Source: Takakia lepidozioides (taxonomy: Eukaryota > Plantae > Bryophyta). From it: 64,000 bases of DNA. The position numbers and the translations under genes were made by a program. Under the pieces are notes generated by a model, which was not told where the DNA came from, ran no database searches, and saw only the letters and a program-made list of their open reading frames with translations. The stretch spans positions 19,530,001 to 19,594,000 of the forward strand of contig CM060733.1 of the NCBI GenBank assembly GCA_030704615.1, in the 5' to 3' direction. Below are positions 1,381 to 41,529 of the stretch, in pieces; position 1 is the first letter of the stretch; every line of letters begins with the position of its first letter.

Positions 1381-1499
1381 ACCCCTGCAGCATGATTTGC
1401 ATGTTGAACCGCAAGAGCAGGTCAAGGGCTGCACCAGTGTTACGAACGGAGTATGGAACACTTGTCGCTAGACCCAGCATATATGACCAGGGTTGGCAA

Positions 1500-1806
1500 A
1501 ACAAACGTGACACAGCCTATCCAGCCCAGCACGGCAAAAGCACAGCCTATCACAAGCCAATCACGACGTGAAACAGATCACAAGCCATCACGACGTACAC
1601 AGCAGCCTATCACAGATCGGACACCAATCCATCACAGCCCATACGACGTGACACATCCTATCACAGCCCAGCCACGGCGCAACACAGAGCCTATCACAAC
1701 CTACCCACAGCGTGTCACAGCCTATCACAGCTTACCACAGTGCATCACAGCCTATCACAAACGTAACACCTTAATGACACAGCCTGTCACAGCTCAACAC
1801 AGCCTA
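1500..1806 (+). repeat. Degenerate tandem array (CACAGCC / CACAGCCTATCAC) downstream of integrase
   Basis: Repeated acacagcctatcacag units. The homologous, longer array is at 30030-30480 in copy A4. Confidence 0.85.
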
Positions 1807-6038: not shown

Positions 6039-6076
6039 ACCGTGAGGACACGGCTTTTTGAGGGGGGAAGGGGTAA

Positions 6077-7135
6077 TGTTAGAGGACTGTCGGGGACTTA
6101 GACACTTATACGGGATCTGTAGGGTACCCTTAATTTTTGCACAGACTGAGACCAACAGGAGCCTTAGGGGTGACAGCAGCGCACTGTAGAGGGGGGTTAC
6201 ACAGCCCGTCACAGCCGTCACAGTCGTCACAGCAGACACAGCCGACACAGCCGACACAGCCCGGCACAGCCAAACACACAGCCCGTCACAGTCGACACAA
6301 AGCCCGACACAGCCAACACAGCCCGTCACAATCGTCACAGCCAACACAGCCAACACAGCCCGTCACAGTCGTCACAGCAGACACAGCCGACACAGCCCGG
6401 CACAGCCACACAGCCAGTCACAGCCCGACACAGCCAAACACAGTCGCACAGCCAGTCACAGCCCGTCACAGTTTCACACAGCCAGTCACAGCTTGACACA
6501 TCTGTCACGATCATAGGGAACAAAGAGTAGGACAGGGAACGACTGTGGGGAACAACACCTGCGAAGGGAACATGTTAGTTCACAGACACGGTTAGTGAGG
6601 GAAACGGTTAGAACCGCGGATAGGAAGATAAAGGGAGAAACGGGGAATGAAGGGACATCATTCGGAGGAGGACTTCTTGGTGATAGATGATTGGGAGGAG
6701 ATCGGGTAGAGATGAGGAACGGAAGTGAAGATAGAGAGATGATGAGTAGATGCTTGATATAGGCAAGGCTGTAATGATATTGTAGAGCAGATTAGAGACA
6801 CAATGGCTTTGGCCTGATACCTGATAAATCATAATCGGATACTTTTACGATACAATCACACTGTGTAGAGAGATCTGAGTGAAGCTGTGAAATGAATGGA
6901 TGAGCTGATGGAATCCAATAGATTGATAAAGCAAATTGATACTTAATTATCAATGGTAAGATAGCTAACATGAATACCAAAAGGAAAACAAATAGGAAAC
7001 ACCCCCATGATACACTAGCTGTAGGTCATGACTGATTGTTCTGCGCGGGCTGAGTACTTAGAGATTTCCAACTCTTCTATCTTGGAGTTTCCGCCTCGAA
7101 TAGCGAAGGGATGGGTGAGTAAAAGCCGCGCGACA
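6077..7135 (+). repeat. 3' LTR of A1 (contains a CACAGCC minisatellite at about 6199-6495)
   Basis: TG..CA ends, preceded by the PPT. Matches the LTRs at 20376-21174, 22513-23560 and 37227-38325. Confidence 0.95.
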
Positions 7136-20375: not shown

Positions 20376-22512
20376 TGTTACATGACTGTCTGGGACTTAG
20401 GCACTTTTACGGGATCTGTGGGGTACCCTTAATTTTTACACAGACTGAGACCAACAGGAGCCTTAGGGGTGACAGCAACAGGCTTTAGGGGGGAGAGACA
20501 CAGCCCGACACAGCCCAACACAGCCCAACACAGTCGCACAGCCAGTCACAGCCCGTCACAGTTTCACACAGCCAATCACAGCTTGACACAGCGGTTAGTG
20601 AGGGAAACGGTTAGAACAACGGGTAGGAAGATAAAGCCAGGAGCAAGGACTGGAAAATGATCACTTCTTGGGGAATCACTTCTGGAAGGACTTCGGGGGG
20701 GGGATCACAACTGGGAAATGAAGCGGAGAGCGCATCTCTGAGAAGAAAGAGGGAGAGCACGGAGTAGGAGGAGAACGATCTGTTGATACTTGCTGAACGC
20801 AAGAAGTAGAGTTGTAATGTAGAGCAGAATAGAGATACCATGGCTTCAGCCTGATACTTGATAGATATTAATCTAATACATACTTCATATTCACACTGTG
20901 TAGAGAGATCTGAGTGAAGCTGTGGAATGAATGGATGAGTTGATGGAATCCGATAGATTGCTGAAGCAAACTGATACTTAAATACCAACAATAAGGTAAC
21001 TAGCTAACATGAATGCGGGGAGGAAAACAAATAGGAAACACCCCCATGATACACTAGCTGTAGGTCATGACTGATTGTTCTGAGCGGGCTGAGTGCTTAG
21101 AGATTTCCAACTCTTCTATCTTGGAGTTCCCACCTCGGATAGCGAAGGGATGGGTGAGTAAAAGCCGCGTGACATTTGGCGACCATACTGGGGAATTGGG
21201 TCATGAACAACCAGATGTGACAGGCATCTGGTGGGATCATGGTGGTTGGAGAATTAAAGAATTTGATGTGAATCGAATTCCCCGTGAAACTGAGAAGGAA
21301 AGATTGTCCAAACGATTCTTTCAGAGGTTCTTGGAATTGCCAGATGGTTGTAAGGAAAACATTCTTAAGAGAGTGCATGATGCTGACCCTGAGTGGGGTC
21401 TGGAGAAAGGAGTGATAAAGATTTATCAGGTGGCTTGTAGAGGAAGAGCACGTTGGTTACCAACACTGGTTTATGTGATAGCATTGCTATCCATTAAGCG
21501 AGTGGAGTTTGAAGGCTAGGAGGAAAGAAAGGTGAATGTTTATACTCATATGCATGAAGAGCTTGTACTGGTAAAGAATTGGATTCCAAAGGATATTTTG
21601 TGGATCAAACTCACACCAAGAACAGCTTTCCAGACTTGTTTGCCATATGGTTATATGGTAACGGAGACTTCTAGTATAGCCAAGGGTGCATTGAAGCTTG
21701 AAAGAAACCCAGGCATATACGAGAGATATTACAGAAGAGAGTTTTGGTTATTGCCACATTAAAAGAAATGAAAGACATGGGACATGAGTGATGAAAGAGA
21801 AGCTAGACGCCAAAGATATTCAGCAAAAAGAGAAAGCTATCTGAAAGCTAATTATCCATATCTTTGGGAGAGAGGAATAGACATAGGGGAATCATCTGGA
21901 CCTCTCACACCATTAAGATCAGAGAGTACATCACCCATACCGGAAGAACTAGAGTTGGATGCCACTCCTTCTTTTTCTTTGCAAGAAAGATTAAGGGAAT
22001 TGGTACGGGAAGAAGATCAATCACGAGGTGAAAGATCTGAGGTACATCCCTGGATAAAAGATTTGACAGAAATCTTTGATAAGAGTTGGCATGGAACACC
22101 AAAAGCAGGAACTCCAGTTTCTGAAGCGGAAGGTGAAGAAGGAGGAGAGGATGTGGCAGAGCCAACGGAGAGTTCAGACTCTCCAACACCATTGCAGTTG
22201 AGTTACATGAGTGAAGAAGAAACCCAAGGGCAGAACTTGGAGGATGAAAATAGAGAGAAGAAATTGGAAGATGAAGAGTATGAAGAAGTAGACCCAATAG
22301 CTGAGGTTGAGACTACAACCAGGACATCCCAACCCGTTGGACCTGGATCAAGTGGAGCACTTGGATCACAGGCCAACGAAGGTGTCGGCTCAGGGGGATC
22401 AGGTGGGCTGCCTGGATCTGGCTCTGGGGGGACAGGGAGTGTGGGAAGTAGTGCAACTGGAGCTGGGAATACTGTGAATATCGTGGGGCCAGTAGCAGGG
22501 AGTGCTCAAGGG
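20376..22512 (+). mobile_element. Family A copy A2, 5' end (LTR 20376-21174, PBS, ORF1, gag start), cut by A3
   Basis: tgtta..cgtgaca LTR, PBS tggcgaccatactgggga at 21177-21194, gag ATG at 21784. Confidence 0.93.
21067..21762 (+). pseudogene. Family A ORF1 copy with one nonsense change (TGG>TAG at 21517-21519)
   Basis: ORFs 21067-21519 and 21532-21762 together equal the 231-aa ORF at 36639-37334. Confidence 0.9.
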
Positions 22513-25500
22513 TGTCGCGCGGCTTTTACTCACCCATCCCTTCGCTATCCGAGGCGGAAACTCCAAGATAGAAGAGTTGGAAATCTCTAAGCACTCAACC
22601 CGCTCAGAACAATCAGTCATGACCTACAGCTAGTGTATCATGGGGGTGTTTCCTATTTGTTTTCCTTCCCGCATTCATGTTAGCTAGTTACCTTATTGTT
22701 GGTAATTAAGTATCAGTTTGCTTCAGCAATTTATCGGATTCCATCAACTCATCCATTCATTCCACAGCTTCACTCAGATCTCTCTACACAGTGTGAGTAT
22801 GAAGTATGTATCAGATTAATATTTATCAAGTATCAGGCTTAAGCCATGGTATCTCTATTCTGCTCTACATTACAACTCTACTTCTTGCATTCAGCAAGTA
22901 TCAACAGATCGTTCTCTTCCTACTCCGTGCTCTCCCTCTTTCTGCTCAGAGATGCGCTCTCCGCTTCATTTTCTAGTTCTGATTTCCCCCAAGAAGTGCT
23001 CCCCCACCCCTTCTAGCAGTGATTCCCCCCAGAAGTGATCCAAGAATCCCCCCCTTTTCCAGTCCTTGCTCCTGGCTTTATCTTCCTACCCGTTGTTCTA
23101 ACCGTTTCCCTCACTAACCGTCATCCGTGAAGTAACATGTTCCATTCGCAGGTGTTGTTCCCCACAGTCGTTCCATGTCCTGCTATCCGTTCCCTATGGT
23201 CGTGACAACTGTGTCAAGCTGTGACTGACTGTGTGAAACTGTGACCGGCTGTGACCAGATGTGTCGGGCTGTGACTGGCTGTGTGGCTGTGTCGGGCTGT
23301 GTCGGCCGTGCGAAGCTGTGACGGGCTGTGTTGGGCTGTGTCGGCTGTGACTGGCTGTGTTGGACTGTGACGGCTGTGTTGGCTATGACGGGCTATGTCG
23401 GCTGTGACTGGCTGTGTTGGCTGTGACGGGCTGTATAACCCCCCCCCCTAAAGTGCGCTGCTGTCACCCCTAAGGCTCCTGTTGGTCTCAGTCTGTGCAA
23501 AAATTAAGGGTAGCCCACAGATCCCGTAAAAGTGTCTAAGTCCCAGACGGTCCTCTAACATTACCCCTTCCCCTCTCAAAAAGCCGTGTCCTCACGGTTT
23601 ACTATTTGGGATTTGTAAACCTTTGTGAGCAAGCACCCTTATGACGTTGAGAGTCTCGTGAAGGACTCCGTGTGCGAGCTCGTGTTCTGTCACTGGTTGA
23701 GGGAGATGATTGAACACTACCTGGATATGTCAGTCCCTCTGGAGGCTGATATCGAGGTAATCTTTCAGGCATATGAGACCCCCGTCGCTTCTTCTCTGCC
23801 ATCTGTTCTCGCTTGTAAATAAGAAGCCATTAGCTGTTCCTCAGGTACATAGACTCTCTTGTCGATATTTGAAGTGAGGTCCTCCACTTGAGTCTGCAGG
23901 CTGTCTATATCCTCCTGTAATCCGCTATCCTACTATAGACATTGTCTATAGTAATTGTGGCAATGTTCTGCATTTGCAGTCTGAGCTCATTCATCTCGCT
24001 TTGGGTGAGCTTTCGTGGTGCTTTGCCCTCCACTGGCCCTTGTGCTAACCAAACCTGCATAAGGTGGTTATCCACCAAGTTGTTTGTGGCACCCCTGAGA
24101 GTCTGCTCCTCTGTGAGCCTGTACACATCTATCTGCTGCTTTAAAGCCTCCATGCGCTTCGCATGAGGTTCAACCAAACTCGCATAGGCAGCAGCCAGAT
24201 TATTGGCTTCCTTCCAAGCTTTGTTAGCCACGAGAGTTCATTTCTATTGGACATGAGTGTTTGTTTTCAACTCAAGGAGGTACCTCTCTTGGTCAGCTTC
24301 AACCTGCATGTATTGGGTTGAAGGTATTCTCATTGCGACAGATTGTATTCTTCATATCGACATGAGTTTCGTTTGCTCGACATTCTCCTGCCTCTGCCTT
24401 CGTACATCTTTCCGCTTGACTGTTTATTTCTATTGTACTTTGGTCAAGCATAGTTGTGAGTGTAGCACATTGTAATGGCCATCCTGTCATGCATGTCTGC
24501 AACTCCGTATGTAGTGCATTCACGTCTTTTGACAACTTGCTTTCATGCTTCACCTGCATTTGGGTATAGCTGTTGCTTATGTTCTTCGTGGCAACTGGTC
24601 TTGGCGAGGCCTGCCTCAATCAATTGTTCCTTGGCCATTGCAAAGCCACTTCTGTACTCTCTAAGTCTTGCTGCATCTTGAGAGTGACCTCTTCATCGAC
24701 CTTGTTTGCACACTCAGTGGCAAGTCGAGCCTCAAACTCCTTCCTGAGTTCCTTCCTCAAAGCTGCCAATTGGGAAGTTGGAACTGGGACTTTTGACATA
24801 AGTGCCCAACAAATTAATTGTCCTGCTTATGGAACTCAGAGCATGGCTTGTTGAGGGTCATCATGGGTGAGCTTGCTGCTGTTCTCCCCCCCCAGGTGGT
24901 GGCAGAAATTGAGAAGGGGACCTTCTCTATGAATATTCTGGTATGGTCAAAGACAAAACAGTGATTCCGGAGGTGCAACGGTTGTCCAGGGGAACCTGCG
25001 GTGCATATAATACACACACCTGTGACGGAGGGTACCACAAGTAGAATGTCAAGACACTGCAGCACCGGTGACGGATGAAGTGGTTCAGGAAGAAATCTGT
25101 GGGCAATGGCCTGAGTGGTTCGTGAGGCATCACACTCTTGAGTATGTCAGTATATTCATTTTGGGTGGGCTGTTTTGTTCACATATGTGGTTGGAGAGGC
25201 ATTATATTCTGTAGTGGGAATATCTAACCCTTCTTTTTCCAAATCAATTATTTCTGGGGGCACTGCATGGACAACTTGTGGTAACTCTGTGACAAGCCGA
25301 TCATCTGGCTGTGATGGCTGTGATACTGAAGTAACTCTTCTCTTCCCTTCTCAGGTCCTCTGCTTCCAAGAATAGCAGTTCTCTGTGCTGCTGTGTCCCT
25401 TCCTGCACAAGAGCTTGGGAAACATTAATCATGCGGATTCCGTGAAGCCAGTGGATCCGCCACTACAGTCTTTCCCCGCTCTGTCTCTTAGTCTGGGGTT

Positions 25501-26360: not shown

Positions 26361-28897
26361 GGTAGAAGCATGGTACGGGCCATCCAAAAGCGGCAACTTG
26401 CAGTCCATAAAAATGGACATATGAAGTAGAAAACGCAGCACGCGGGAACGAAGTCGGAAAAAGTTGAATTTATTGTAGCCGTTGATTGTTTTTGTACATC
26501 AAGTTATTCGCCTTCATCGGGGGGTGGCTGGAAGATGGCTAGTCGCGTTGGGCTAGACTGAAGTGCGGGGACGACGAGCTGCCATGTATGACGCGCGATG
26601 CACAACTAGAAGCTAGCCAAGACGTACGAGTTGATTGGGATTGGAATGTGAAGAGATTGGGAAGAGATTGGGAATGTTTGATCACAAAAGTTTGCTTACC
26701 ATTTTGTAAGATTTTTAGGGTTTAGCTTGTGATTGTTTCATCAACTCTACGCATGCGTGAAGTTCATTTTCATTTCTGTGTTTCTAATGGGCGCGCTTGG
26801 GGGGTGGTAGCAGAGGAAGCGGGCGATGCGAGCAGAGCTTTAAAGTGCAACATTGTGTGTTGCTGCCATAGCAACAGAGGCATGAGGGTAGAGGAGTAGA
26901 GGAGGAGCTTGGGCGGGGGTGCTCGGGTGTGCCATCGCTGGAAAAGCACTTGATTGTTGCTTGACTCTACCCTTAATAAGTTTCGTTCAAGTTCGTGGCC
27001 AGTCGATTTGGTGTGCGGCATATCTGGAATTAGGTTCTGCAAGCATGAATGTTTCTGTCGAGCGCCTGGAAAGAGGATGGCAGATTGCCATCCAAATGAT
27101 GATCATGACTAGAACTTTCCACTTGAACTCTACAAGTACGAGCCACCGCTGCGATCTTTCACGCCTGATCTATACTTCTTGCATTGTGCATTTGAACACA
27201 GGTGTTAATTGCCTTTCTTGAATCTTGACAGTGATGCCTGTTTTGTTTATCATTCTCTATGGTGTGTTCCTTGTTGGGTTGGTATTTCTCCATTTTTTTC
27301 CCCGCCCAGAGAAGGATATACTTACGTCTTGTTAGTGAGTCTAGTTGAGCTAATTTTTGGAGCTACCTGCTAGCAATTCATGTTGTAAAACCCTAAAAAT
27401 TTAGCTGCACAGTCATTCATACAGACAGTTTGTATGTGACCATTACGGTGAGGGTACCTGCACGATGATTGATCACAAAGTCTGCTTACTGTTACCTTTG
27501 TGAGGGCTCACTCCAGTAGTTGGAGCTACCTGATATAAACAATTGGTTGCATCAATCTGCTGTGTCTGAGCTACCTAGCAATTAGACCCCAACAGGGCCA
27601 GGGCCTTAGGCTCAAAATCGATACTTTGAAAGTTAGTGAACAGAGGTGCAAGCACTATACGGTCCTGAAGAGGGTGGCTCTCTGAATTGACCCCCCGCCC
27701 TGGGGTTAAATTGTAGTTTAATTTTGAGGATAGGTAGGTCTTTCAGCCTAAGGTTCACCCATGTCACAAACTGGAAACAAGTTCAGGGATGTTTATTCCT
27801 AACTTATTTTTGTTCAAGCATTATTTCATGCTTCGGACGTGGCTTTAGACACTTCAGCCTCCAAGTGAGCTTCATCCAGCAGGGTCAGTTCTTCATGCCC
27901 AAACTTCAGGTACTTGAAACATCTCCTCTACATTTTTCTGCCATGACTTCAAACTGTTTAACAGGACGGTCTTGCTTCCAAGAAATAGAGTCTGTCATCT
28001 TAAGGTATCTGGTATTAGGCACTGAGCCCACCATCTGACCTTGAACTAACTCATGACTTTGAGAGCTCGAGGGTGGTGCGCCAAACTCGCCTTGAACAGC
28101 CGCATTAGCTATTGTAGAGCACGCTGACATGCTCTCTTTGAGCACCGACCTGAATGGATTTAAAGTTTTAGGCATGGTTGGAGTTGCTCTCCACACGGCA
28201 ATGCCTACTCCAAGGAAGGCCAACATGGTCGTTGTAACTTCAGTATTAATCCGTCTCAAAGTGGAAACATTTGAGTGAGAATATCCAAAGTTTGTGTTTA
28301 GTTGTTTGACCTATTTTGTGTATGTTCTCACAGTACAACTAGAGGAGAACTCCAAGCAAGATATGTGCTGGAAGGGAGCACACAATTGTGGCATTTATAC
28401 GTGGGGAGGGATTGAGGGGATCTGGCCTAATCTGGCCTACCATTAGACTTGTGAACTGTTGTCGCGGCTGGTTTTCAAGTGAGACTGCATGCCCTTTTTT
28501 GTCAGGTGACATTTGTATAGGGCTGTACCAAATGTGGTCGTTGTTATAAAAGGGACGATATCAGCGAGGCAGGGGAGAGTAGCAGATGTAGCATAGGTAG
28601 CATGAATGTAAAGTTGTCACCACTGGTAGTGTGTACCCAGTCCCAGTGTCTATTCACACAGGTGAACAGACCCCTGAGTTTGTTTCACTTATCTTGTGTT
28701 TATGACTTCAAACTACTCTCCAACAAGCTACCCCTTTTTGTGTTATAGTGAGGGGGGCAAGTGGATCCCATTTTTTGGAGACCTGGACCCGGTAGACCTA
28801 TTTTTCCTAGTGTGCCACAAAAAGGCCACAGTCTGTGACTGTTGATTTGCCAAGAATTTTGGGAGTGTCCTGTGTTGAAAATGTTTGGTTTCCTCTT

Positions 28898-29397
28898 NNN
28901 NNNNNNNNNNNNNNNNNNNNNNNNNNNNNNNNNNNNNNNNNNNNNNNNNNNNNNNNNNNNNNNNNNNNNNNNNNNNNNNNNNNNNNNNNNNNNNNNNNNN
29001 NNNNNNNNNNNNNNNNNNNNNNNNNNNNNNNNNNNNNNNNNNNNNNNNNNNNNNNNNNNNNNNNNNNNNNNNNNNNNNNNNNNNNNNNNNNNNNNNNNNN
29101 NNNNNNNNNNNNNNNNNNNNNNNNNNNNNNNNNNNNNNNNNNNNNNNNNNNNNNNNNNNNNNNNNNNNNNNNNNNNNNNNNNNNNNNNNNNNNNNNNNNN
29201 NNNNNNNNNNNNNNNNNNNNNNNNNNNNNNNNNNNNNNNNNNNNNNNNNNNNNNNNNNNNNNNNNNNNNNNNNNNNNNNNNNNNNNNNNNNNNNNNNNNN
29301 NNNNNNNNNNNNNNNNNNNNNNNNNNNNNNNNNNNNNNNNNNNNNNNNNNNNNNNNNNNNNNNNNNNNNNNNNNNNNNNNNNNNNNNNNNNNNNNNN
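28898..29397. other. Assembly gap (500 N)
   Basis: Fixed-length run of N. Confidence 1.
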
Positions 29398-30029
29398 AAC
29401 GTATGGTTGGCCGCAGAAAGCTACATGGGTACCTCTTGTAAGCCTGCGGGGCTTGCAAGCATTGTTCAAAGAGAAAAGCTCTGCTCTTTCGTTTCGTGTC
29501 TTCTGCCACTGCGTAAGTAATATTGCGAGCGTAATGTCTGTTAGTTCCTCCATAGTTTCCAAGTTATAGCATTTATGGGCCTGTCCTGTCTGAGACGCCC
29601 TGTTACTCTGAACGACGCCGCCTCTTGCGCTCAATTTCCCTCCATTTCTTGATCATTTTTCTGGTTTTCTATTGCTGTGGCCGCTGTGACTGGATTTTTA
29701 ACTTTTAACTTCTTTAGTGGACTTTCCCTGTTGGATAGTCCACTAGGATCACACATGCGACATGAATTCGGCTTTCTGTACTTGCCGTTCGTTCTGTTTC
29801 CCTTTTTCCGTAATCATTAATGGGTCCGCCTTTCATTCCTTTTGACGGCCGTTTCTTGTCCTCTTTCTTTTTGACACCTGTCCCTTGCACTTCATTCTCT
29901 GCTGTGTGTCGCACCCTGACCTCCACGTGTCTATTTTAAATTAAATTTCCGTTTCTTCTTCCTTCAGCCATTTTACTGAAGTTTTTATGTGTCCACTTGT
30001 CACTGATTCTATGGATCCGTGTAACTTTA

Positions 30030-30480
30030 GTAGGCTGTCTGAGCTGTGATAGGCTAGTGTTGCACTGTGCGTAAGCTGTGATAGGCTGTGACACGCTGCG
30101 GTAGGTTGTGATAGGCTGTGTCACGCTGCGGGTGTGTTGGCTGTGTCACGTCGTGACGGGCTGTGATAGGCTGTGTCACGTCGTGACGGGCCTTCGGTAA
30201 GCTGTGTTGCGCCTTGCTGGCTGTGGTTGGCGTGTCACGTCGTGATGGGCCTGTGATAGGCTGTTGTCACGCCGTGATGGGCTGTGATAGGCTGTGTGCC
30301 CTTGCTGGCCTGTGGTTGGCTGTGTCACGTCGTGATGGGCTGTGATAGGCTGTGTCACGCCGTATGGGCTGTGTATACTGTGGTGCCCTTTGCTGGCTGT
30401 GGTTGGCTGTGTCACGTCGTGATGGGCTGTGATAGGCTGTGTCACGCGTGATGGGCCTGTGATAGGCTGTGTCACGTTGT
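30030..30480 (-). repeat. Tandem array (gtgacacagcctatcacagcccatcacgac-type units) downstream of integrase
   Basis: Repeated gctgtgataggctgtgtcacg on the + strand. Confidence 0.9.
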
Positions 30481-33400
30481 TTTGCCCACCCCGGTCATAT
30501 ATACTGGGCCTAGCGACAAGTGTTCCATACTCCGTTCGTAACACTGGTGCAGCCCGTGACTGCTCTTGCGGTTTCAACATGCAAATCATGTTGCGGGGTT
30601 TGTCATGGATACCACTGTACCCCTTCAAACTTATTTGCATTGACTCTTCCCAGCATTTCTTTGTTAATGGTTTGTAACATGGCTGTGTTGTTATCATACA
30701 TCTTTTGTATGACATAAGGTCCTTTCCATGGTGATTTAAGCTTAGAAGCTTGAATCTTTCCTTTCTTCTGCAACCATAAAACAAATCCCCCGTCTTAAAA
30801 GTCTTTAATTTGCCTTTATCAAACTGTTCCTTTCGCTTCATCTGAATTCTGGTCATATTATCAGCTGCATCAGCACGTACTTCTTCCACATGGTATAATT
30901 CATGTTTCCTGACCTTGATGGAGTCTTGCAATTCCATTCTTTTTCCCCACTCTGTTCTCATGGTAGGTAACAGGAATTCCACTGGAAGTAAGGCTTCCAT
31001 ACCATAAACTAATTGGAATGGTGTATACTTAGTGGTGACTTTATATGAAGTCCTGTATGACCACAAAGCTGTCAGCAGCTTTGTATCCCAATCCGTTCTG
31101 TTTGCATTGACTATCTTAGCCAAGATAGTACATAGTATTTTGTTGGTAGCCTCTGCCTGTCCATTACCCTGTGGGTAATATGTTGTACTCTTTCTATGCA
31201 CAATCATAAACTCTTTAGTCAATAACTCAATGGTCTCATTCATGAAGTGACTTCCTTGATCACTGATAAATTCTAAGGGACATCCAAATCGTGTAAGTAT
31301 GTTCTCGTACAGGAACCTTGCTGTGGACTTGGCTGTGTTGTCCCTCAAAGCTTTAGCTTCCACCCACTTTGTAGTATAATCAGTGGCTGTAATTATGTAC
31401 CTGTTTCGTGTATTCTTGGATGGTGGATTAATTGGTCCAACAAAGTCTAGTCCCCATTTCTGAAATGGTTCCGTAGGCATTGTAGGATGCAAGGCCATTC
31501 TTCCAGATCTCTGCAAAGGTCCTAGCCTCTGACATTCATCACACTTCTGACAATACTCATGTACATCTTTGAACAACGTAGGCCACCAGTATCCTGCGAG
31601 TAGTATCTTTCTACTGGTAGTCTCTTCTCCAAAATGACCTCCAGCCACTCCTTTATGAACTTCCTCCAAGACTTTATTTACTTCATGGTGGTACAAGCAT
31701 CGTTTTAGTACTCCATCAGGTCCTAACTTATACATTCTGCTTCCTACCATAGTATAAGGTAAAGCTCTGATAGCAATTCTTTTCCTTTGCTCCTTACCAT
31801 AACTAGGTGGGCACTGACCATGAGCAAGGTAGTATCTGATTGGCCATTGCCAATCTAACCATTCATCTGCACTTCCTTGCACCTCCATTACAAATAAACT
31901 CGCATCAGGTAACTGATCGTCCACTCCTGTGGCGGCCTCTCCTGTTGTTAGTCGTGACAAATGATCTGCCACAAGATGCAAACGGCCAGGCTTGTAAATA
32001 ACCTCGAACTCAAACTCATGCAAGATTATTAACCACCTCGCTATCCTTCCACTTATCAAAGGTTTGTTCACCAGATATATCAGAGCCTGGTGATCCACAT
32101 AAAACATAAACTTTCTTCCCAATAGGTAATGCCTGAATTTCTTCACTGCATAGATCATTGCCAATGCTTCTCTTTCCGTTGTGCTATAGTTCCTCTCAGC
32201 ACTGTTCATCAACCGGCTAGCATAGTACACAGGTGAATCTATATTCCCTGTAACATTCTGGGCTAACACCGCTCCCAACGCTTCTCCTGATGCATCGCAG
32301 TGAACATGAAATACTACATGCCAGTGAGGGTTAATCAGCACAGGTGTAGTTGTTACTGACAGTGTAAGTTCCTCAAACGCCTGTTGACATTCAGCTGTCC
32401 ATGCAAACACTGCATCTTTCTTCAGAAGCTTGCTCAATGGTGCTGCTATTTGTGCATACCTTTTGACAAATCTTCTGTAATAACTGGTTTGCCCAAGGAA
32501 TCTCCTTAAACTCTTAACATTCACTGGTGGTGGAGAGACTTTAATGGACTCTGTCTTCCTGGGATCCACAAGAAGTCCCTTCTTACACACTATGTGTCCC
32601 AGAAGCACCCCTGAGTTCACACAGAAAGTACACTTCTCTGGATTCAAGCCCAGACCTCTCATCCTGCATCTGGCCAGGCATAACTCCAATTTATGCAAGT
32701 GCTCATTCTTAGAGCTGTACACACTGAAATCATCCAAAAACACCTGCATGAAATCATCCAGATACTCTTGAAAAGATTCACTTATCACTCTCTGAAAGGT
32801 CGCTGGTGCATTACAAAGTCCAAAGGGCATGACTTTGTATGCATAAGCCCCCCAGTCTGTGATGAAAGCTGTTTTCCCTTGGTCTTCTTCTGCCACTTGC
32901 ACTTGATTATAACCACTGAAGCCATCCATGAATGAGTACATCTCATGGCCTGCCACAGTGTCTAATACTGCTTCTGTGAATGGCAAAGGGAAAGGATCTT
33001 TCTTCGTACAAGCATTCAGCTTCTTATAGTTCACACATACTCTTAGTTTGCCATTCTTCTTGGGAACTATAACAATGGGTGACAACCAAGTTGTATACTC
33101 TATTGGGTATATAAACTTAGCCTCAGCCAACTTCTTTATCTCTTCTCCAACCTTCTGTGCGTAGTTGGGATTCATTCTATACCTCGCCTGCTTGATTGGC
33201 ACTGACCCTGGTTCCAGTTCAATTTTATGCTGACAGACTTCAGGTGGTATCCCTTTTAGATCCTCATAGCTCCAAGCAAATACATCTCTGTATTTGATGA
33301 ACAAGCTTTTAGCTTCTTCGAAGAATTCCGGCTCCAAATCAGCTCCTACTTTCACCATCCTTGGTTCCTCCGGAGTTCCCACATTTACTTCTCTCACCTG

Positions 33401-36400
33401 CTCATCAGCTGTGATTGTCCAACCAGTCACCACTTCATCCTGTAAGCTCACAGTGGCTGGTTCTTCTAGGATTTCTATTTCTCCTTCTCTTTCTTCATAG
33501 AAATGTGATGGGTAAATGCTGGTTTCTTCTTCCGTTGGTGTTGCTGTCACTACACCACAGCAGATACCTCTCAAACAACTTAGGCTTTCCAGCCGCATCT
33601 CTGCAACTTGCTCCCACTCTGGGTGTGCAGCAAATAGGGTAGCTTCCTGCTCCTCATCCAGTCCTCCCCTCCAGTCATACTCTCTGACTCCTCGAGGTCT
33701 TCTTGTAGCAGGTAATCTACTAGATTTCTTTGTGGTAATTTGTATCTCGTGCATCCCATTATGCACAGTTAGTAACTGAGAATTCCAGTCATGGAATACC
33801 CTGGCCTGTTTCAGCCACGGACGTCCCAATAATAAGGAGTAAGCCTCCATGACTTCATCCATTTTTAATACAGTTACTGTGATCAGAAAGATCATTTTCT
33901 GTATCTGTATCTTAACTCCTCTTATTAATCCCAATGGCTGTACACTTCTTTGATCTGCCATTGTTACTGTAAATGGGGCTGGTTTCATGTTACTTAGACC
34001 AAGCTTCTTCCTTAATTGGTCTGTCATGATATTTACTCCAGAACCACCATCTATCAGTACATCAGTTAGTTCTGTGCTTCCAATTCTCAATTGGATTACT
34101 GGCATAGAATCATCAAAGTCCATGACTGGTTCTCGCCCTTCCGGCTTCACATTATAACTGGTCACCTTGCTGTTCAGGTCTGTGTTTCCTGTTTCTTGGG
34201 CAATTCGATTGATTGCCTGATACAGCCTGTGCCTACAATAAGGTGCCACAGCTAATAGCTGTCCAATGGTAATTTCTGCTTTGGTCTGACATATTACTTC
34301 AGCCAAAGTCTCTTCATTACTTTGCATGTCTGCATCTTCTTTTCTCCTTTCTTCCTCACTCTCCTCTTTTTCTCCATCCGAATCAGAGGAATCTGCCACA
34401 GGAATATCAGTACTCTTTTGCATTTCCCTTATAGTATCTGCCACTTCCTTGTGCAGTTCCTTCTCATCCTTCCAAGTCTCTTCATCTTCAGGCATATCAT
34501 TGCCACTTCCAGTCTCATCTTCTTCCTCTTCTACTGGAGGTATTAGTTTAGCTTTACTTCTTGTTACTATCATTGTACTTACTTCTGGTACAACACATGG
34601 CCTAACCATGTGAGCTGCCACCACTGGGCCCTCATTCACAGGAGCTCTCATCTCATTCTGGTGTCTTATCCAGAATGAACAGGCTGCCTTGCGATGTCCT
34701 GGCTGATTACAATAGTAACATAGCTCTTCACCATTGGGTCCTCGCCCTTGGTCTGGTCTTGGATTATTTCTATAATCCTGATTCCCGGGCTGGTAATTCC
34801 CCCTTGGATTACCCTGATAGTTGCCTCTGGAATTTCCTTGGTAATTCCCTCTTGAATTACCTCTTCCTTCCATGCCATTGTTATAACCACCAGACCTACC
34901 ATAGTGGTCCTGATCATTGCTTCTTCTTGGCTGGGGTTGCACCTGATGCACCCTCACTTGCCTAGGTTCTCTGGCAGCTGTCCTTCTGTTGTAGTAACAA
35001 TTCTCAGTAGAATGGTTATCCATTTTACAGATAGTACAGTGTTTCTCCTTCATGTGGCATTCTGTAGTGGTATGGCCTTCATTCTGGCACTTTGCACACC
35101 ATACACCCTTCCTCCAATGTGTTGCAGCCTCTGTGGCATACTTCTTCAAGATTTCTTCCAATCTTTTCTCATAGTTATCCCTCTTCAACTTTTCCTTTCT
35201 CTTACTCTTTCTTTTTAGTTCTTGCTCTTCTTCTTCATCTGACTCATCTTCAGAGTCCTCATCTTCCTTTTTCTCTCTCCTGAGCATTCCCAATTGCTCA
35301 ATTCTGTTCGCAGTTTCAAATGCCTCCTCCACTGTATTATGGGGTAACATATCCACTTTCTTCTGCAACTCTGGTCTTAGTCCACTCACAAACCAAGTCT
35401 TCTGTAAACCGGGTGCTGGTACTGCAGCCAGCTTTTTCATCATCAATTCCATCTTCTCCATATACTCTTCAACAGTTTCATGCTTCTTCTGCTTCAGCTG
35501 TTGTAAACTTCCATACACTTCATCCTCAGTTTTACTTGTCCTGAACCTATTTCGAAATGCTGTATTCAAGCCATTCCAGGTTAGGAAATGATTATCAGGG
35601 AATCTTGCATACCATTCACTTGCTTTCTTGATAAGTGAACAAGGAAACAGTCTCATCTTGGCATCATCGCCATTCTCATTGTTCACTATACACATGTGCT
35701 CAAATTGGCTAATGTGTACATCGGGATCCCCTTTTCCTGAATATATTGGAAAGGGTGGTTTTGCCCGTGTTGGTTGTAACGCCATCTGTGGCCCTACCTT
35801 CTGCCCACTGACAGGTGCTGGCACCCTTGCTGGTGCTGGTCCTTCTGGACCTGTTGTTTTTGTGGTGGATCTTCCACCAAGTGGTGGCCCTTGAGCACTC
35901 CCTGCTTCTGGCCCCACGATATTCACAGTATTCCCAGCTTCAGTTGCACTACTTCCCACACTCCCTGTCCCCCCAGAGCCAGATCCAGGCAGCCCGCCTG
36001 ATCCCCCTGAGCCGACACCTTCGTTGGCCTGTGATCCAAGTGCTCCACTTGATCCAGGTCCAACGGGTTGGGATGTCCTGGTTGTAGTCTCAACCTCAGC
36101 TGTTGGGTCTACTTCTTCATATTCTTCCTCTTCCAATTTCTTCTCTCTGTTTTCATCATTCAAGTTCTGCCCTTGGGTTTCTTCTTCACTCATGTAACTC
36201 AACTGTAATGGTGTTGGAGAGTCTGAACTCTCCGTTGGCTCTGCCACATCCTCATCTCCTTCTTCATCTTCTGCTTCAGAAACTGGAGTTCCTGCTTTTG
36301 GTGTTCCATGCCAACTTTTATCAAAGATTTCTGTCAAATCTTTTATCCAAGGATGTACCTCAGATCTTTCACCTCGTGATTGATCTTCTTCCTGTACCAA

Positions 36401-36616
36401 TTCCCTTAATCTTTCTTGCAAAGAAACAGAAGGAGTGGCATCCAACTCTAGTTCTTCCGGTATAGGTGATGCACTTTTTGATCTTGATGGTGTGAGAGGT
36501 CCAGATGATTCCCCTATGTCTATTCCTCTCTCCCAAAGATATGGATAATTAGCTTTCAGATAGCTTTCCCTTTTTAATGAATATCTTTGTCGTCTAGCTT
36601 CTCTTTCATCACTCAT
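30176..36616 (-). CDS. Gag-Pol polyprotein (long acidic/Gly-rich N-terminus, capsid, three CCHC knuckles, PR, RT, RNase H, INT; no chromodomain). The last ~200 aa are frameshift read-through into the repeat array
   Basis: CAKCQNEGHTTTEC, CTICKMDNHSTENC, CYYCNQPGHRKAAC; LIDGGSGVNI; FMDGFSGYNQ..VFLDDF; HCDASG; GHFG..CDEC; WGLDFVGP. Copy A1 shows the true frame (VLWLQ..PWKGPY) after about 30785. Confidence 0.96.
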   Translation of the reverse strand: MSDEREARRQRYSLKRESYLKANYPYLWERGIDIGESSGPLTPSRSKSASPIPEELELDATPSVSLQERLRELVQEEDQSRGERSEVHPWIKDLTEIFDKSWHGTPKAGTPVSEAEDEEGDEDVAEPTESSDSPTPLQLSYMSEEETQGQNLNDENREKKLEEEEYEEVDPTAEVETTTRTSQPVGPGSSGALGSQANEGVGSGGSGGLPGSGSGGTGSVGSSATEAGNTVNIVGPEAGSAQGPPLGGRSTTKTTGPEGPAPARVPAPVSGQKVGPQMALQPTRAKPPFPIYSGKGDPDVHISQFEHMCIVNNENGDDAKMRLFPCSLIKKASEWYARFPDNHFLTWNGLNTAFRNRFRTSKTEDEVYGSLQQLKQKKHETVEEYMEKMELMMKKLAAVPAPGLQKTWFVSGLRPELQKKVDMLPHNTVEEAFETANRIEQLGMLRREKKEDEDSEDESDEEEEQELKRKSKRKEKLKRDNYEKRLEEILKKYATEAATHWRKGVWCAKCQNEGHTTTECHMKEKHCTICKMDNHSTENCYYNRRTAAREPRQVRVHQVQPQPRRSNDQDHYGRSGGYNNGMEGRGNSRGNYQGNSRGNYQGNPRGNYQPGNQDYRNNPRPDQGRGPNGEELCYYCNQPGHRKAACSFWIRHQNEMRAPVNEGPVVAAHMVRPCVVPEVSTMIVTRSKAKLIPPVEEEEDETGSGNDMPEDEETWKDEKELHKEVADTIREMQKSTDIPVADSSDSDGEKEESEEERRKEDADMQSNEETLAEVICQTKAEITIGQLLAVAPYCRHRLYQAINRIAQETGNTDLNSKVTSYNVKPEGREPVMDFDDSMPVIQLRIGSTELTDVLIDGGSGVNIMTDQLRKKLGLSNMKPAPFTVTMADQRSVQPLGLIRGVKIQIQKMIFLITVTVLKMDEVMEAYSLLLGRPWLKQARVFHDWNSQLLTVHNGMHEIQITTKKSSRLPATRRPRGVREYDWRGGLDEEQEATLFAAHPEWEQVAEMRLESLSCLRGICCGVVTATPTEEETSIYPSHFYEEREGEIEILEEPATVSLQDEVVTGWTITADEQVREVNVGTPEEPRMVKVGADLEPEFFEEAKSLFIKYRDVFAWSYEDLKGIPPEVCQHKIELEPGSVPIKQARYRMNPNYAQKVGEEIKKLAEAKFIYPIEYTTWLSPIVIVPKKNGKLRVCVNYKKLNACTKKDPFPLPFTEAVLDTVAGHEMYSFMDGFSGYNQVQVAEEDQGKTAFITDWGAYAYKVMPFGLCNAPATFQRVISESFQEYLDDFMQVFLDDFSVYSSKNEHLHKLELCLARCRMRGLGLNPEKCTFCVNSGVLLGHIVCKKGLLVDPRKTESIKVSPPPVNVKSLRRFLGQTSYYRRFVKRYAQIAAPLSKLLKKDAVFAWTAECQQAFEELTLSVTTTPVLINPHWHVVFHVHCDASGEALGAVLAQNVTGNIDSPVYYASRLMNSAERNYSTTEREALAMIYAVKKFRHYLLGRKFMFYVDHQALIYLVNKPLISGRIARWLIILHEFEFEVIYKPGRLHLVADHLSRLTTGEAATGVDDQLPDASLFVMEVQGSADEWLDWQWPIRYYLAHGQCPPSYGKEQRKRIAIRALPYTMVGSRMYKLGPDGVLKRCLYHHEVNKVLEEVHKGVAGGHFGEETTSRKILLAGYWWPTLFKDVHEYCQKCDECQRLGPLQRSGRMALHPTMPTEPFQKWGLDFVGPINPPSKNTRNRYIITATDYTTKWVEAKALRDNTAKSTARFLYENILTRFGCPLEFISDQGSHFMNETIELLTKEFMIVHRKSTTYYPQGNGQAEATNKILCTILAKIVNANRTDWDTKLLTALWSYRTSYKVTTKYTPFQLVYGMEALLPVEFLLPTMRTEWGKRMELQDSIKVRKHELYHVEEVRADAADNMTRIQMKRKEQFDKGKLKTFKTGDLFYGCRRKERFKLLSLNHHGKDLMSYKRCMITTQPCYKPLTKKCWEESMQISLKGYSGIHDKPRNMICMLKPQEQSRAAPVLRTEYGTLVARPSIYDRGGQNNVTQPITGPSRVTQPITAHHDVTQPTTASKGHHSIHSPYGVTQPITAHHDVTQPTTGQQGHTAYHSPSRRDNSLSQAHHDVTRQPQPARRNTAYRRPVTT

Positions 36617-36638
36617 GTCCCATGTCTTTCATTTCTTT

Positions 36639-37334
36639 TTAATGTGGCAATAACCAAAACTCTCTTCTGTAATATCTCTCGTATATGCCTGGATTTCTTT
36701 CAAGCTTCAATGCACCCTTGGCTATACTTGAAGTCTCCGTTACCATATAACCATATGGCAAACAAGTCTGAAAAGCTGTTCTTGGTGTGAGTTTGATCCA
36801 CAAAATATCCTTTGGAATCCAATTCTTTACCAGTACAAGCTCTTCATGCATATGAGTATAAACATTCACCTTTCTTTCTTCCCAGCCTTCAAACTCTACT
36901 CGTTTAATGGATAGCAATGCTATCACATAAACCAATGTTGGTAACCAACGTGCTCTTCCTCTACAGGCTACCTGATAAATCTTTATCACTCCTTTCTCCA
37001 GACCCCATTCTGGATCAGCATCATGCACTCGTTTAAGAATATTTTCTTTACATCCGTCTGGCAATTCCAAGAACCTTTGAAAGAACTGTTTGGACAATCT
37101 TTCTTCCTTCGTTTCACAGGGAATTTGATTCACTTCAAATTCTTTAATGGTCCAACCACCATGATCCCACCAGATGCCTGTCACATCTGGTTGTTCATGT
37201 CCCAGTTCCCCAGTATGGTCGCCAAATGTCGCGCGGCTTTTACTCACCCATCCCTTCGCTATCCGAGGCGGAAACTCCAAGATAGAAGAGTTGGAAATCT
37301 CTAAGTACTCAGCCCGCGCAGAACAATCAGTCAT
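36639..37334 (-). CDS. Family A ORF1, 231 aa, starts in the LTR, has an F-box-like motif; function unknown
   Basis: Open frame ending 22 nt before the gag ATG. 15 synonymous and 0 missense differences against copy A2 over 67 codons (FFQR..VEFEG). Confidence 0.85.
   Translation of the reverse strand: MTDCSARAEYLEISNSSILEFPPRIAKGWVSKSRATFGDHTGELGHEQPDVTGIWWDHGGWTIKEFEVNQIPCETKEERLSKQFFQRFLELPDGCKENILKRVHDADPEWGLEKGVIKIYQVACRGRARWLPTLVYVIALLSIKRVEFEGWEERKVNVYTHMHEELVLVKNWIPKDILWIKLTPRTAFQTCLPYGYMVTETSSIAKGALKLERNPGIYERYYRREFWLLPH
37207..37224 (-). promoter_or_regulatory. Primer-binding site TGGCGACCATACTGGGGA (probably tRNA-Arg)
   Basis: Lies 2 nt from the LTR end and is identical in A2. Resembles the plant Arg-type PBS TGGCGACTCCACTGGGGA; the tRNA assignment is inferred. 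Confidence 0.75.
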
Positions 37335-38325
37335 GACCTACAGCTAGTGTATCATGGGGGTGTTTCCTATTTGTTTCCCTTTTCGCATTCATCTTAGCTA
37401 CCTTACCATTGATAATTACGTATTAGTTTCCTTCACTCCTCCATTCAATCCACAGCTTCACTCAGATCTCTCTACACAGTGTGATTGTATCGTATAAATA
37501 TCAGATTATGATTTATCAGGTATCAGGCCGAAGCCATTGTATCTCTATTCTCCTCTACAATATCCCTACGGCTTTGCATCTAACAAGCATCTACTAATCC
37601 TCCTTCATCGTGCTCTCCGATCTCCGCTTCCGCCTGACTCCCAAGTCCTCCCCGAATAATGATCTCATCATAATCCCCGTTCTTCCCTTTATCCTCCTAT
37701 CCGCGGTTCTAACCGTTTCCCTCTCTAACCGTCGTATGTGAACTAACATGTTCCCTTCTCTGGTGTTGTTCCCCACAGTCGTTCCCTGTCCTACTCTTCG
37801 TTCCCTATTATCGTGACAGCTGTGTCAAGCGGTGACTGGCTGTGTTTGGCTGTGTCGGGCTGTGACTGGCTGTGTGTGCCGGGCTGTGACTGGCTGTGTG
37901 GGCTGTGTCTGCTGTGACGACTGTGACGGGCTGTGTGGGCTGTGTGGGCTGTGACGACTGTGACGGGCTGTGTGGCTGTGACGGCTGTGTGGGCTGTGTG
38001 GGCTGTGACGGCTGTGTGGGCTGTGTGGGCTGTGTGGGCTGTGTGGCTGTGTGGGCTGTGACGGCTGTGACGGGCTGTGTGGCTGTGACGGCTGTGTGGG
38101 CTGTGTGGGCTGTGACGGCTGTGTCGGGCTGTGTGGGCTGTGTGGGCTGTGTCGGCTGTGTGGGCTGTGACGGCTGTGACGGCTGTGTGGGCTGTGGGTT
38201 GTGTAACCCCTTCTACAGTGCTCTGCTGTCACCCCTAAGGTTCCTGTTTGTCTCAGTCTGTGCAAAAATTAAGGGTACCCTACAGATCCCGTATAAGTGT
38301 CTAAGTCCCCTACAGTCCTCTAACA
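37227..38325 (-). repeat. 5' LTR of A4 with an expanded CACAGCC minisatellite (about 37822-38200)
   Basis: TG..CA termini and homology to the other family A LTRs. Confidence 0.95.
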
Positions 38326-38641
38326 ACAGCTGTCACGATAATAGGGAACGAAGAGTAGGACAGGAACGACTGTGGGGGAACAACACCAGTAAAGGGAACA
38401 TGTTAGTTCACATACGACGGTTAGAGAAAGAAACGGTTAGAACCGCGGATAGGAGGATAAAGGGATGAAGGAGGGAGGATTATGATGATTTGGGGGAGGA
38501 CTTCGGAGACAGGCGGGAGCGGAGATCGGAGAGCAAGATGAAGGAGACAAGAGGATTAGTAGATGCTTGTTAGATGCATTCCGCCTTCGGATATTCCGCC
38601 TTCGGATAGCGACAGGGATGGGTTGAGTAAACCGCGCGACA
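38326..38641 (+). repeat. Partial, internally deleted family A LTR in the opposite orientation
   Basis: 38326-38580 is the reverse complement of about 37580-37823; ends ..ccgcgcgaca. Confidence 0.9.
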
Positions 38642-40938: not shown

Positions 40939-41529
40939 AAATGTCACCTTTGGGGCTGTCGCGGCCGGGGATCGTTGCACCAATTGTTGGTGATGATCCG
41001 TTGAACCCTGAGGTTGATGTCACACCTGATACCATCATGCAAGAGGTTTCAGCTTCAGGAAAGGATTATGTCAAGAAGTTCCTCATTCCTTGTTCTCCAC
41101 CAAAAAAGATTCTGGATCTCCACTGCAGGCTGCATTTGTTCCAGAGATTGTCACGACACATACGCTACAAGTACACACATGAAGATGTTGTGGACTTGAC
41201 AATCCCATCCACCTGTTGTTCCTCCTTATGTGGATGTGAAAAATGTCACCTTGGGGCTGTCGCGGCGGGATCGTTGCACCAATGTTGGTGATCCGTTGAA
41301 CCCTGAGGTTGATGTCACACCTGATACCATCATGCAAGAGGTTTCAGCTTCAGGAAAGGTTATGTCAAGAAGTTCCTCATCCTTGTTCCCACCAAAAAGA
41401 TTCCTGGATCTCCACTGCAGGCTGCATTTGTTCCAGAGATTGTCACGACACATACGCACAAAGTACACATGAAGATGTTGTGGACTTGACAATCCCATCC
41501 ACTGTTGTTCTCCTTATGTGGATGTGAAG
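40939..41529 (+). repeat. Tandem duplication of about 300 bp
   Basis: aatgtcacctt..tgtggatgtgaa occurs twice (about 40939-41240 and 41241-41529), differing mostly by 1-bp indels. Confidence 0.9.

What the first reader, a model, noticed from the sequence alone, without database searches (positions are those of the whole stretch)
36639..37334. Retrotransposon accessory gene that starts inside the LTR, reads through the PBS, is under purifying selection and has an F-box-like motif
Seen: the only in-frame ATG for the N-terminal part of this 231-aa ORF lies about 107 nt inside the 5' LTR. The frame crosses the CA end and the tRNA PBS (..SRAT-FGDHTGE..) and stops 22 nt before gag. Against copy A2 (21067-21762) I count 15 synonymous and 0 missense changes across 67 codons (FFQR..VEFEG). 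All four full LTRs keep the ATG and an open frame, with synonymous variation even in the LTR part (ttt ccg cct cga vs ttc cca cct cgg). The conserved block begins FQRFLELPDGCKENILKRV, resembling the F-box pattern (L..LP.E....IL..L). Known: Ogre/Tat elements have 5' extra ORFs, and polerovirus P0 uses an F-box-like motif to engage SCF and destabilise AGO1. Inference: this may be an element-encoded SKP1 adaptor or anti-silencing factor, with coding sequence overlapping att and PBS.
Basis: partly seen in the sequence, partly recalled or inferred. Interest (0 to 1): 0.85.

Follow-up and report, generated by a model that had tools for sequence, protein, structure and literature searches.

The report
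Conserved extra gene before gag
A plant jumping gene (Ty3/gypsy LTR retrotransposon) carries a real, strongly conserved 231-codon extra gene in front of gag that starts inside the LTR and runs across the primer-binding site; extra genes of this kind are known, this one has no detectable relatives, and the suggested F-box identity is not supported.

Summary
On the minus strand, 36639-37334 is a 231-codon ORF. Its ATG lies 107 nt inside the 5' LTR. The frame crosses the LTR end and the PBS and stops 22 nt before the gag-pol ATG. Against copy A2 (21067-21762), codons 84-231 show 19 synonymous and 0 missense changes (p about 1e-13), plus one TAG in A2. That is at least as constrained as RT (omega 0.11). 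Codons 1-83 are looser (omega 0.35), but they stay open, have no indels and use gag-pol-like codons (p about 0.003). So this is a genuine coding accessory gene, a 5' extra ORF of the kind known from Ogre and Retrosat2.

No F-box signal was found. An exhaustive search of 1.84 billion protein representatives found no relative, and elements with related pol lack the ORF. Use of the LTR ATG, the transcription start and any splicing could not be tested, because no usable RNA data were found. Function is unknown. The most likely role is a family-specific factor needed for the element's own replication. First readers noted the same ORF on three other pieces of this genome.

The parts
36639..37334 (-). 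ORF0: 231 codons plus stop, an extra ORF upstream of gag
   Evidence: the only open frame of six; omega 0.09 against copy A2
37227..37334 (-). Codons 1-36 of ORF0, encoded by the last 108 nt of the 5' LTR (presumed U5)
   Evidence: LTR end shared by four LTR copies, ATG and frame kept in all; gag-pol-like codon usage, empirical p 0.011
37208..37224 (-). tRNA-type primer-binding site (17 nt, begins TGG), inside codons 37-43
   Evidence: follows the LTR end after TT; identical in B and A2
37086..37151 (-). Codons 62-83: variable, charged linker
   Evidence: 7.5 non-synonymous against 3.5 synonymous changes, omega 0.48
36642..37085 (-). Codons 84-231: conserved basic, Trp-rich C-terminal domain (pI 9.1)
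   Evidence: 19 synonymous, 0 missense, p 1.5e-13
36617..36638 (-). 22-nt spacer between the ORF0 stop and the gag ATG; B has one extra A compared with A2 and the read contigs
   Evidence: a 1-nt indel puts gag out of frame in B; in the other copies gag is in frame but behind two stops
30176..36616 (-). gag-pol polyprotein (2146 aa; gag, CCHC, PR, RT, RH, INT)
   Evidence: Pfam domains in Ty3/gypsy order
37227..38325 (-). 5' LTR (TGTTA...GACA) with a 9/18-nt tandem array at 37813-38196
37327..37392 (-). Conserved 21-codon upstream ORF in the LTR that overlaps the ORF0 ATG by 8 nt
   Evidence: present in all four LTR copies
21067..21762 (+). Second full copy of ORF0 (element A2), with TAG at codon 151 (21517-21519)
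7028..7135 (+). LTR-encoded part of ORF0 in the 3' LTR of element C
22513..22620 (-). LTR-encoded part of ORF0 in the LTR that closes element B

Best explanation
ORF0 is a genuine protein-coding, family-specific extra gene (an eORF-5'F) of a large non-chromovirus-type Ty3/gypsy LTR retrotransposon.

Shown: the frame is open only in this phase. The C-terminal 148 codons have evolved under very strong purifying selection between two subfamily-level copies. The frame physically spans the LTR end and the PBS. It is a cistron separate from gag-pol.

Inferred: the protein is translated from the full-length genomic RNA, most likely from the U5 ATG at 37334. It would then consist of a loosely constrained acidic N-terminal part (encoded by U5, the PBS and the leader), a variable linker, and a conserved basic Trp-rich domain. 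Because selection on a transposon acts through successful copying, the domain is most likely needed for the element's own replication cycle, for example binding RNA or Gag or helping particle assembly or trafficking. Gag-pol would then be reached by reinitiation or some other non-canonical route 22-25 nt downstream, as in bicistronic LINE-1 RNA (that comparison rests on my own knowledge). The biochemical activity is unknown, and the F-box reading is not supported.
For: Coding: 19 synonymous against 0 missense changes in codons 84-231 (p 1.5e-13). By comparison omega is 0.11 for RT, 0.08 for RH, 0.20 for INT and 0.39 for the gag N-terminus. The other five frames carry 5-17 stops. There is no indel in 696 nt, while indels lie just outside on both sides.

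N-terminal part: it is open in both copies, there is no in-frame ATG between codon 1 and codon 162, its codon usage matches gag-pol (codons 1-83, empirical p 0.003; codons 1-36, p 0.011), and omega for codons 1-61 is 0.20.

Separate cistron: the spacer indel changes the phase relative to gag.

Known kind: extra ORFs, mostly orphans, are common in plant LTR retrotransposons (PMC6317226), Retrosat2 carries an ORF0 (PMC3485330), and the Ty1 PBS lies inside its GAG ORF (PMC4974528). First-reader notes list 692-696-nt copies of this ORF on three other pieces of the genome (unchecked).
Against: There is no RNA, ribosome or protein evidence. The runs found are DNA-like contigs without joints. The selection test rests on only two full copies. 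The 36 LTR-encoded codons show no selection signal of their own (2-3 synonymous against 3-4 non-synonymous), and their conservation could equally reflect U5 cis-functions. Six to nine short upstream ATGs lie in the last 250 nt of the LTR, so a plain scanning ribosome would struggle to reach this ATG unless transcription starts close to it. No homologue, domain or confident fold was found, so the proposed role in replication is inference only.
Confidence: 0.72

Rival explanations
1. The conserved domain (codons 84-231) is real, but it is not started at the LTR ATG. Translation would begin at a non-AUG codon, an internal entry site or a spliced-in exon, and the open frame across U5 and the PBS would be incidental.
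For: The LTR part has no selection signal of its own. Conserved short upstream ORFs precede the ATG, one of them overlapping it. The transcription start is unknown. A consensus GTGAGT donor-like site sits at codons 30-31 in all four LTRs.
Against: There is no other in-frame ATG before codon 162. Codons 1-83 are open in both copies, have no indel, and show gag-pol-like codon usage (p 0.003). Codons 37-61 have 2 synonymous and 0 non-synonymous changes. The contigs show no joints.
Confidence: 0.2
2. ORF0 is an F-box-like SCF adaptor or silencing suppressor, in the manner of polerovirus P0.
For: There is a loose local match at residues 88-103: LP, then IL six residues later, then a hydrophobic residue. 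A pattern of that looseness occurs in only 0.3% of shuffled ORF0 sequences.
Against: No Pfam family matches at E up to 10 and there is no PDB sequence match. The strict pattern fails at three of seven defined positions. The region where an F-box would have its second and third helices is predicted as a beta-hairpin, although at low confidence. One short motif found while reading many ORFs is expected by chance.
Confidence: 0.04
3. ORF0 is a former or conditional N-terminal extension of Gag. In most copies it is in frame with gag and would be joined to it by read-through, in the manner of glyco-Gag.
For: In A2 and in the contigs of two runs, ORF0 and gag are in the same frame, 25 nt apart.
Against: Two stop codons (TAA and TGA) separate them. 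Copy B has a 1-nt indel in the spacer yet keeps both ORFs intact. The closest pol relatives show no ORF0-like sequence at their Gag N-termini.
Confidence: 0.04
4. The conserved domain is a captured, highly diverged fragment of a hAT-transposase-like (DUF659 / ZBED1 RNase-like) protein.
For: The language-model feature search puts only such clusters on top, both for the whole protein and for residues 78-231.
Against: The scores are 0.76-0.80, a level that a third of shuffled proteins reach. There is no Pfam hit and no hit in the exhaustive phmmer search.
Confidence: 0.04

Closest known systems
Extra ORFs upstream of gag (eORF-5'F) in plant Ty3/gypsy non-chromoviruses: Ogre ORF1 and Retrosat2/RIRE3/RIRE8 ORF0 (PMC6317226, PMC3485330)
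   Same: A sense-strand ORF between the 5' LTR/PBS and gag-pol, in a large element with a long 3' region and tandem repeats in the LTR. It has no known domain, is family-specific and fast-evolving overall, and its function is unknown.
   Different: There is no sequence similarity to those ORFs or to the Pfam domains reported for some of them. At 231 codons it falls below the 250-codon cut-off of the REXdb survey. Its start lies inside the LTR. Its C-terminal domain shows RT-level or stronger constraint, whereas Retrosat2 ORF0 evolves faster than pol. The host element has no detectable aRH domain, so it is not a Tat/Ogre member.
[quoted passage not shown]
   Same: The first coding sequence of the genomic RNA begins upstream of the PBS and reads through it, so the PBS serves both as a cis-element and as codons.
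   Different: In Ty1 that ORF is gag itself, in a Ty1/copia element. Here it is a separate accessory cistron ahead of gag in a Ty3/gypsy element.
Bicistronic LINE-1 RNA (ORF1, a short spacer with stops, then ORF2); own knowledge, not checked here
   Same: Two consecutive cistrons on one retroelement RNA are separated by a short spacer, so the downstream replication genes need non-canonical translation.
   Different: LINE-1 is an unrelated element class with unrelated proteins, and the translation mechanism here is untested.
F-box proteins and polerovirus P0
   Same: Only a short LP...IL...V spacing at residues 91-103.
   Different: There is no profile match, and the strict consensus fails at three positions. 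No evidence was found for a three-helix fold or for SKP1 binding.

Membership tests
F-box (Pfam PF00646 / PF12937 type) | Significant match to an F-box profile | tested here: not met
   hmmscan against Pfam-A at E up to 10, on the whole protein and on residues 84-231, returned 0 families
   ORF0 has F..LP.G....IL..V. The strict pattern is absent, and a loosened one occurs in 0.3% of shuffles
F-box (Pfam PF00646 / PF12937 type) | Three-helix bundle of about 40-50 residues | tested here: inconclusive
   AlphaFold2 single-sequence models have pLDDT 31.6 and 37.9. They show a helix and then a beta-hairpin after the LP motif, but are too poor to use
F-box (Pfam PF00646 / PF12937 type) | Binding to SKP1 | not testable with these tools
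Polerovirus P0 silencing suppressor | Sequence similarity to the P0 family | tested here: not met
   No Pfam family matches at E up to 10, and the exhaustive phmmer search gave only two repeat-protein false hits
5' extra ORF (eORF-5'F) of plant LTR retrotransposons (a structural class) | Sense ORF between the 5' LTR/PBS and the polyprotein ORF, not part of the polyprotein | tested here: met
   ORF0 ends 22 nt before the gag ATG, and a spacer indel changes its phase between copies
5' extra ORF (eORF-5'F) of plant LTR retrotransposons (a structural class) | At least 250 codons (the survey criterion of PMC6317226) | tested here: not met
   231 codons. The criterion is operational, not biological
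5' extra ORF (eORF-5'F) of plant LTR retrotransposons (a structural class) | Carries one of the recurrent eORF domains (plant mobile domain, Transposase_28, Athila ORF-1) | tested here: not met
   No Pfam hit. Most eORFs lack these domains too (PMC6317226)
Tat/Ogre lineage of Ty3/gypsy | Additional archaeal-type RNase H (aRH) domain in pol | tested here: not met
   Pfam finds only RT_RNaseH and RT_RNaseH_2, with no second RNase H and no chromodomain. The lineage remains unassigned. The closest pol proteins, at 48-56% identity, come from unnamed environmental contigs and from the liverworts Riccia and Marchantia
Ty1-like arrangement (first ORF starts in U5 and spans the PBS) | ATG inside the LTR and PBS inside the ORF | tested here: met
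   The ATG is 107 nt before the LTR end and the PBS lies in codons 37-43. Actual use of the ATG is not testable here
hAT-transposase DUF659 / ZBED1 RNase-like domain | Profile or fold similarity | tested here: inconclusive
   Atlas feature scores of 0.76-0.80 are at chance level, and Pfam gives no hit

The most novel reading that the evidence does not exclude
ORF0 is an element-encoded antagonist of host defence, for instance a silencing suppressor or an adaptor that recruits a host ubiquitin ligase. It would be translated from an AUG in U5, so that its N-terminus is written over the att site and the PBS. That would be a retroviral-style accessory gene in a plant (possibly bryophyte) retrotransposon.
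Probability: 0.05. Interest if true: 0.85.

Novelty: new member of a known kind. Interest (0 to 1): 0.4.

Why it matters
Extra ORFs are widespread in plant LTR retrotransposons, but the main survey questions whether they have any function (PMC6317226). Here the coding signal is unusually clean for an orphan 5' ORF. A 148-codon domain has no amino-acid change against a synonymous divergence of 0.24, reaching 0.45 in its first half, so it is at least as constrained as reverse transcriptase. That makes it a good candidate for asking what such genes do. The layout, with an ATG in U5, the PBS inside codons, and gag 22 nt after the stop, also raises a concrete translation-control question. It remains one more member of a known class, with a precedent for PBS-spanning coding in Ty1.

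Tried and rejected
Homology searches all came back empty:
- The word-indexed protein search found nothing.
- The exhaustive phmmer search over 1.84 billion representatives gave only two tandem-repeat proteins, which are spurious.
- Pfam at E up to 10 gave nothing.
- PDB sequences gave nothing.
- Back-translated scans of metagenome and viral contigs gave nothing.
- The exact-sequence contig lookup gave nothing.
- ORF0 has no similarity to its own gag-pol.

Relatives. A gag-based search found nothing. A pol-based search found many relatives. Three contigs encoding the closest ones (L001-L003) have no ORF0 homologue upstream of gag. The 155-aa ORF upstream in L001 looks like a split-off Gag N-terminus.

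Structure. Two single-sequence AlphaFold2 runs gave pLDDT 31.6 and 37.9. No fold search was run because the matches would be meaningless. A deeper alignment could not be built.

Atlas feature search. It gave only chance-level scores, for DUF659 and ZBED1 clusters.

RNA evidence.

Other points. A conserved RNA structure instead of coding is rejected because the changes sit at third codon positions of one frame only. An antisense gene is rejected because those frames carry 5-12 stops. Complex prediction was not used because no SKP1 sequence was available.

Full report
**Anatomy**

The finding lies on the minus strand. ORF0 (36639-37334, 231 codons) sits directly upstream of a 2146-aa polyprotein ORF (30176-36616, minus strand). 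That polyprotein carries Retrotrans_gag, zf-CCHC, aspartyl protease, RVT_1, RT_RNaseH, Integrase_H2C2 and rve domains in Ty3/gypsy order. Pfam reports no chromodomain and no second RNase H.

A self-comparison of the window shows a nest of related elements:
- **Element B (minus strand, 38325 down to 22513).** Its LTRs are about 1.1 kb, run TGTTA...GACA, have a polypurine tract before the 3' LTR, and hold a 9/18-nt tandem array in U3.
- **Copy A2 (plus strand).** Its LTR is 20376-21174, ORF0 is 21067-21762, and gag starts at 21784. It is cut off at 22512.
- **Element C.** This is a 3' end at 1-7135.

An alignment of the four LTR ends fixes the LTR boundary at 37227 in B. After a TT spacer a 17-nt PBS beginning TGG follows at 37224-37208. 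The ATG at 37334 is therefore 107 nt inside the LTR. Codons 1-36 are LTR-encoded, codons 37-43 are the PBS, and the stop lies 22 nt before the gag ATG.

**Is it coding?**

B and A2 differ at 35 codons over 696 nt with no indel: 24 synonymous and 11 non-synonymous, one of the latter being a TAG at codon 151 of A2. Nei-Gojobori estimates by partition:

| Codons | Synonymous | Non-synonymous | omega | Note |
|---|---|---|---|---|
| 84-231 | 19 | 0 | 0 | dS 0.24; binomial p 1.5e-13 |
| 84-150 | 15 | 0 | 0 | dS 0.45 |
| 1-61 | 4 | 3 | 0.20 | |
| 62-83 | 3.5 | 7.5 | 0.48 | |
| 1-36 (LTR part) | 2 | 3 | 0.43 | not significant |

The same changes read in the other sense frames give omega above 2. Those frames carry 16-17 stops, and the antisense frames 5-12.

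Baselines from other copy pairs in the window are omega 0.11 for RT, 0.08 for RH, 0.20 for INT and 0.39 for the gag N-terminus. The C-terminal domain of ORF0 is therefore at least as constrained as the enzymatic core. The locally raised synonymous divergence, together with very different U3 regions in the two copies, suggests that they represent different subfamilies or a mosaic. That makes the complete amino-acid identity more telling.

**Is the N-terminal, LTR-encoded part translated?**

This is not shown directly.

In favour:
- There is no in-frame ATG between codon 1 and codon 162.
- The frame is open in both copies.
- There is no indel inside the ORF, although indels lie just outside both ends.
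- A codon-usage score trained on gag-pol is positive in this frame only. It is 0.195 for codons 1-36, 0.098 for codons 37-83 and 0.14 for codons 1-83, against 0.186 ± 0.057 for gag-pol chunks. The empirical p values against windows of presumably non-coding sequence are 0.011, 0.036 and 0.003.

Against:
- Among the four LTRs, the 36 LTR codons carry about as many non-synonymous as synonymous variants.
- The near-invariance of this stretch could be a U5 cis-requirement.
- The last 250 nt of the LTR hold six to nine short upstream ATGs. One is a conserved 21-codon uORF that overlaps the ORF0 ATG by 8 nt.
- The transcription start is unknown.

They show the family in two organisms. They also show that most copies have the A2-type spacer, one A shorter, which puts gag in frame with ORF0 behind two stops. 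They show no joints or RNA ends.

**What is the protein?**

It has no detectable relatives.
- The word-indexed search found nothing.
- The exhaustive phmmer search of 1.84 billion representatives found only two tandem-repeat proteins, which are spurious.
- Pfam at E up to 10, PDB sequences, and metagenome and viral contig scans were all empty.
- The closest pol proteins (48-56% identity) come from unnamed environmental contigs and from the liverworts Riccia and Marchantia. This hints at a bryophyte-like host, but that is inference only.
- Three contigs encoding the nearest relatives have no ORF0 homologue upstream of gag.
- Two single-sequence AlphaFold2 runs failed (pLDDT 31.6 and 37.9).
- Atlas feature scores of 0.76-0.80 for DUF659 / ZBED1-like clusters are at chance level.

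By composition the protein has an acidic N-terminal third (pI 5.1) and a basic, tryptophan-rich conserved domain (pI 9.1). It has no transmembrane-grade hydrophobic segment.

**The F-box claim**

A pattern loosened to what ORF0 actually satisfies appears in 0.3% of shuffles. That is unremarkable for one motif noticed while reading many ORFs. No F-box or P0 profile matches. SKP1 binding could not be tested. I rate this reading at about 4%.

**Most likely mechanism**

Shown: ORF0 is a separate, selected cistron that overlaps the LTR end and the PBS.

Inferred: it is translated from the genomic RNA, probably from the U5 ATG, perhaps after reinitiation past the short uORFs. Because only copies that transpose leave descendants, the domain very likely serves the element's own replication. 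Gag-pol must then be reached by reinitiation or another non-canonical route 22-25 nt after the ORF0 stop.

**Comparison with known systems**

- Extra ORFs are common in plant LTR retrotransposons, especially large non-chromovirus Ty3/gypsy elements. They fall into hundreds of unrelated groups, and most lack known domains (PMC6317226).
- Retrosat2, RIRE3 and RIRE8 carry an ORF0 upstream of gag-pol with no assignable function (PMC3485330).
- Coding sequence that spans the PBS has a precedent in Ty1 GAG (PMC4974528).

This is therefore a new member of a known kind. It stands out for its very clean selection signal, for its LTR-internal start, and for being short enough (231 codons) to escape the 250-codon survey threshold.

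First-reader notes list the same 692-696-nt ORF on three other pieces of this genome, and different 5' accessory ORFs in another family. These notes are unchecked. They are consistent with a multi-copy, often intact gene.

Noticed in passing
window 22513-23560 versus 37227-38325: The two LTRs that bound element B are only about 85% identical over their last 330 nt. The 5-bp flanks do not match (GCTGT against CCCTT in element orientation). The 3' one resembles the A2 LTR (92%), and the 5' one resembles the LTR of element C. B is therefore probably a recombinant of two subfamilies rather than a single clean insertion.
   Followed up: partly
window 37242-37247 (minus strand): A consensus 5' splice-site hexamer (GTGAGT, preceded by GG) sits at ORF0 codons 30-31, 15 nt before the LTR end, and is invariant in all four LTR copies. 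It could be a leader splice donor, as in retroviruses, or chance. The contigs laid showed no joints.
   Followed up: partly
window 37327-37392 (minus strand) and further upstream in the LTR: Conserved short upstream ORFs precede the ORF0 ATG in all four LTRs. One of 21 codons ends 8 nt inside ORF0. This suggests uORF-controlled translation of the leader.
   Followed up: partly
window 36636: Copy B has one extra A in the A-run of the ORF0-gag spacer. A2 and the contigs of two public runs lack it, which puts gag in frame with ORF0 behind TAA and TGA.
   Followed up: yes
window 28898-29397: A run of 500 N (an assembly gap). The ORFs of 211-275 aa listed around 28700-29634 are artefacts of this gap.
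   Followed up: yes
window 37813-38196 (and 6199-6500, 23209-23434): A tandem array with a 9/18-nt period (about 34 copies) lies in U3 of the LTR, and its copy number differs between LTR copies. The A2 LTR is about 300 nt shorter here.
   Followed up: partly
window 38326-38578: An inverted fragment of the same LTR (89% to 37575-37823) abuts the outer end of the B 5' LTR, another sign of rearrangement in this nest.
   Followed up: no
window 30045-30477: The 3' end of the gag-pol ORF runs into a tandem-repeat region. The last roughly 250 residues after the integrase core do not look like a normal integrase C-terminus, and they match copy C at only about 60%. A frameshift in one copy is possible.
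   Followed up: no
L001 7720-11893; L003 7777-10741: Contigs encoding the closest pol relatives carry two or three further ORFs (293-675 aa, no Pfam domain) downstream of pol, that is, 3' extra ORFs. In element B the corresponding 6.6-kb region (23561-30176) has only short open frames.
   Followed up: partly
window 40939-41528: A tandem duplication of about 300 nt (94% identical), unrelated to the element studied.
   Followed up: no
window 12614-14943 (minus strand): A pol fragment of a second, distant Ty3/gypsy family (29-36% identical to the B polyprotein).
   Followed up: no
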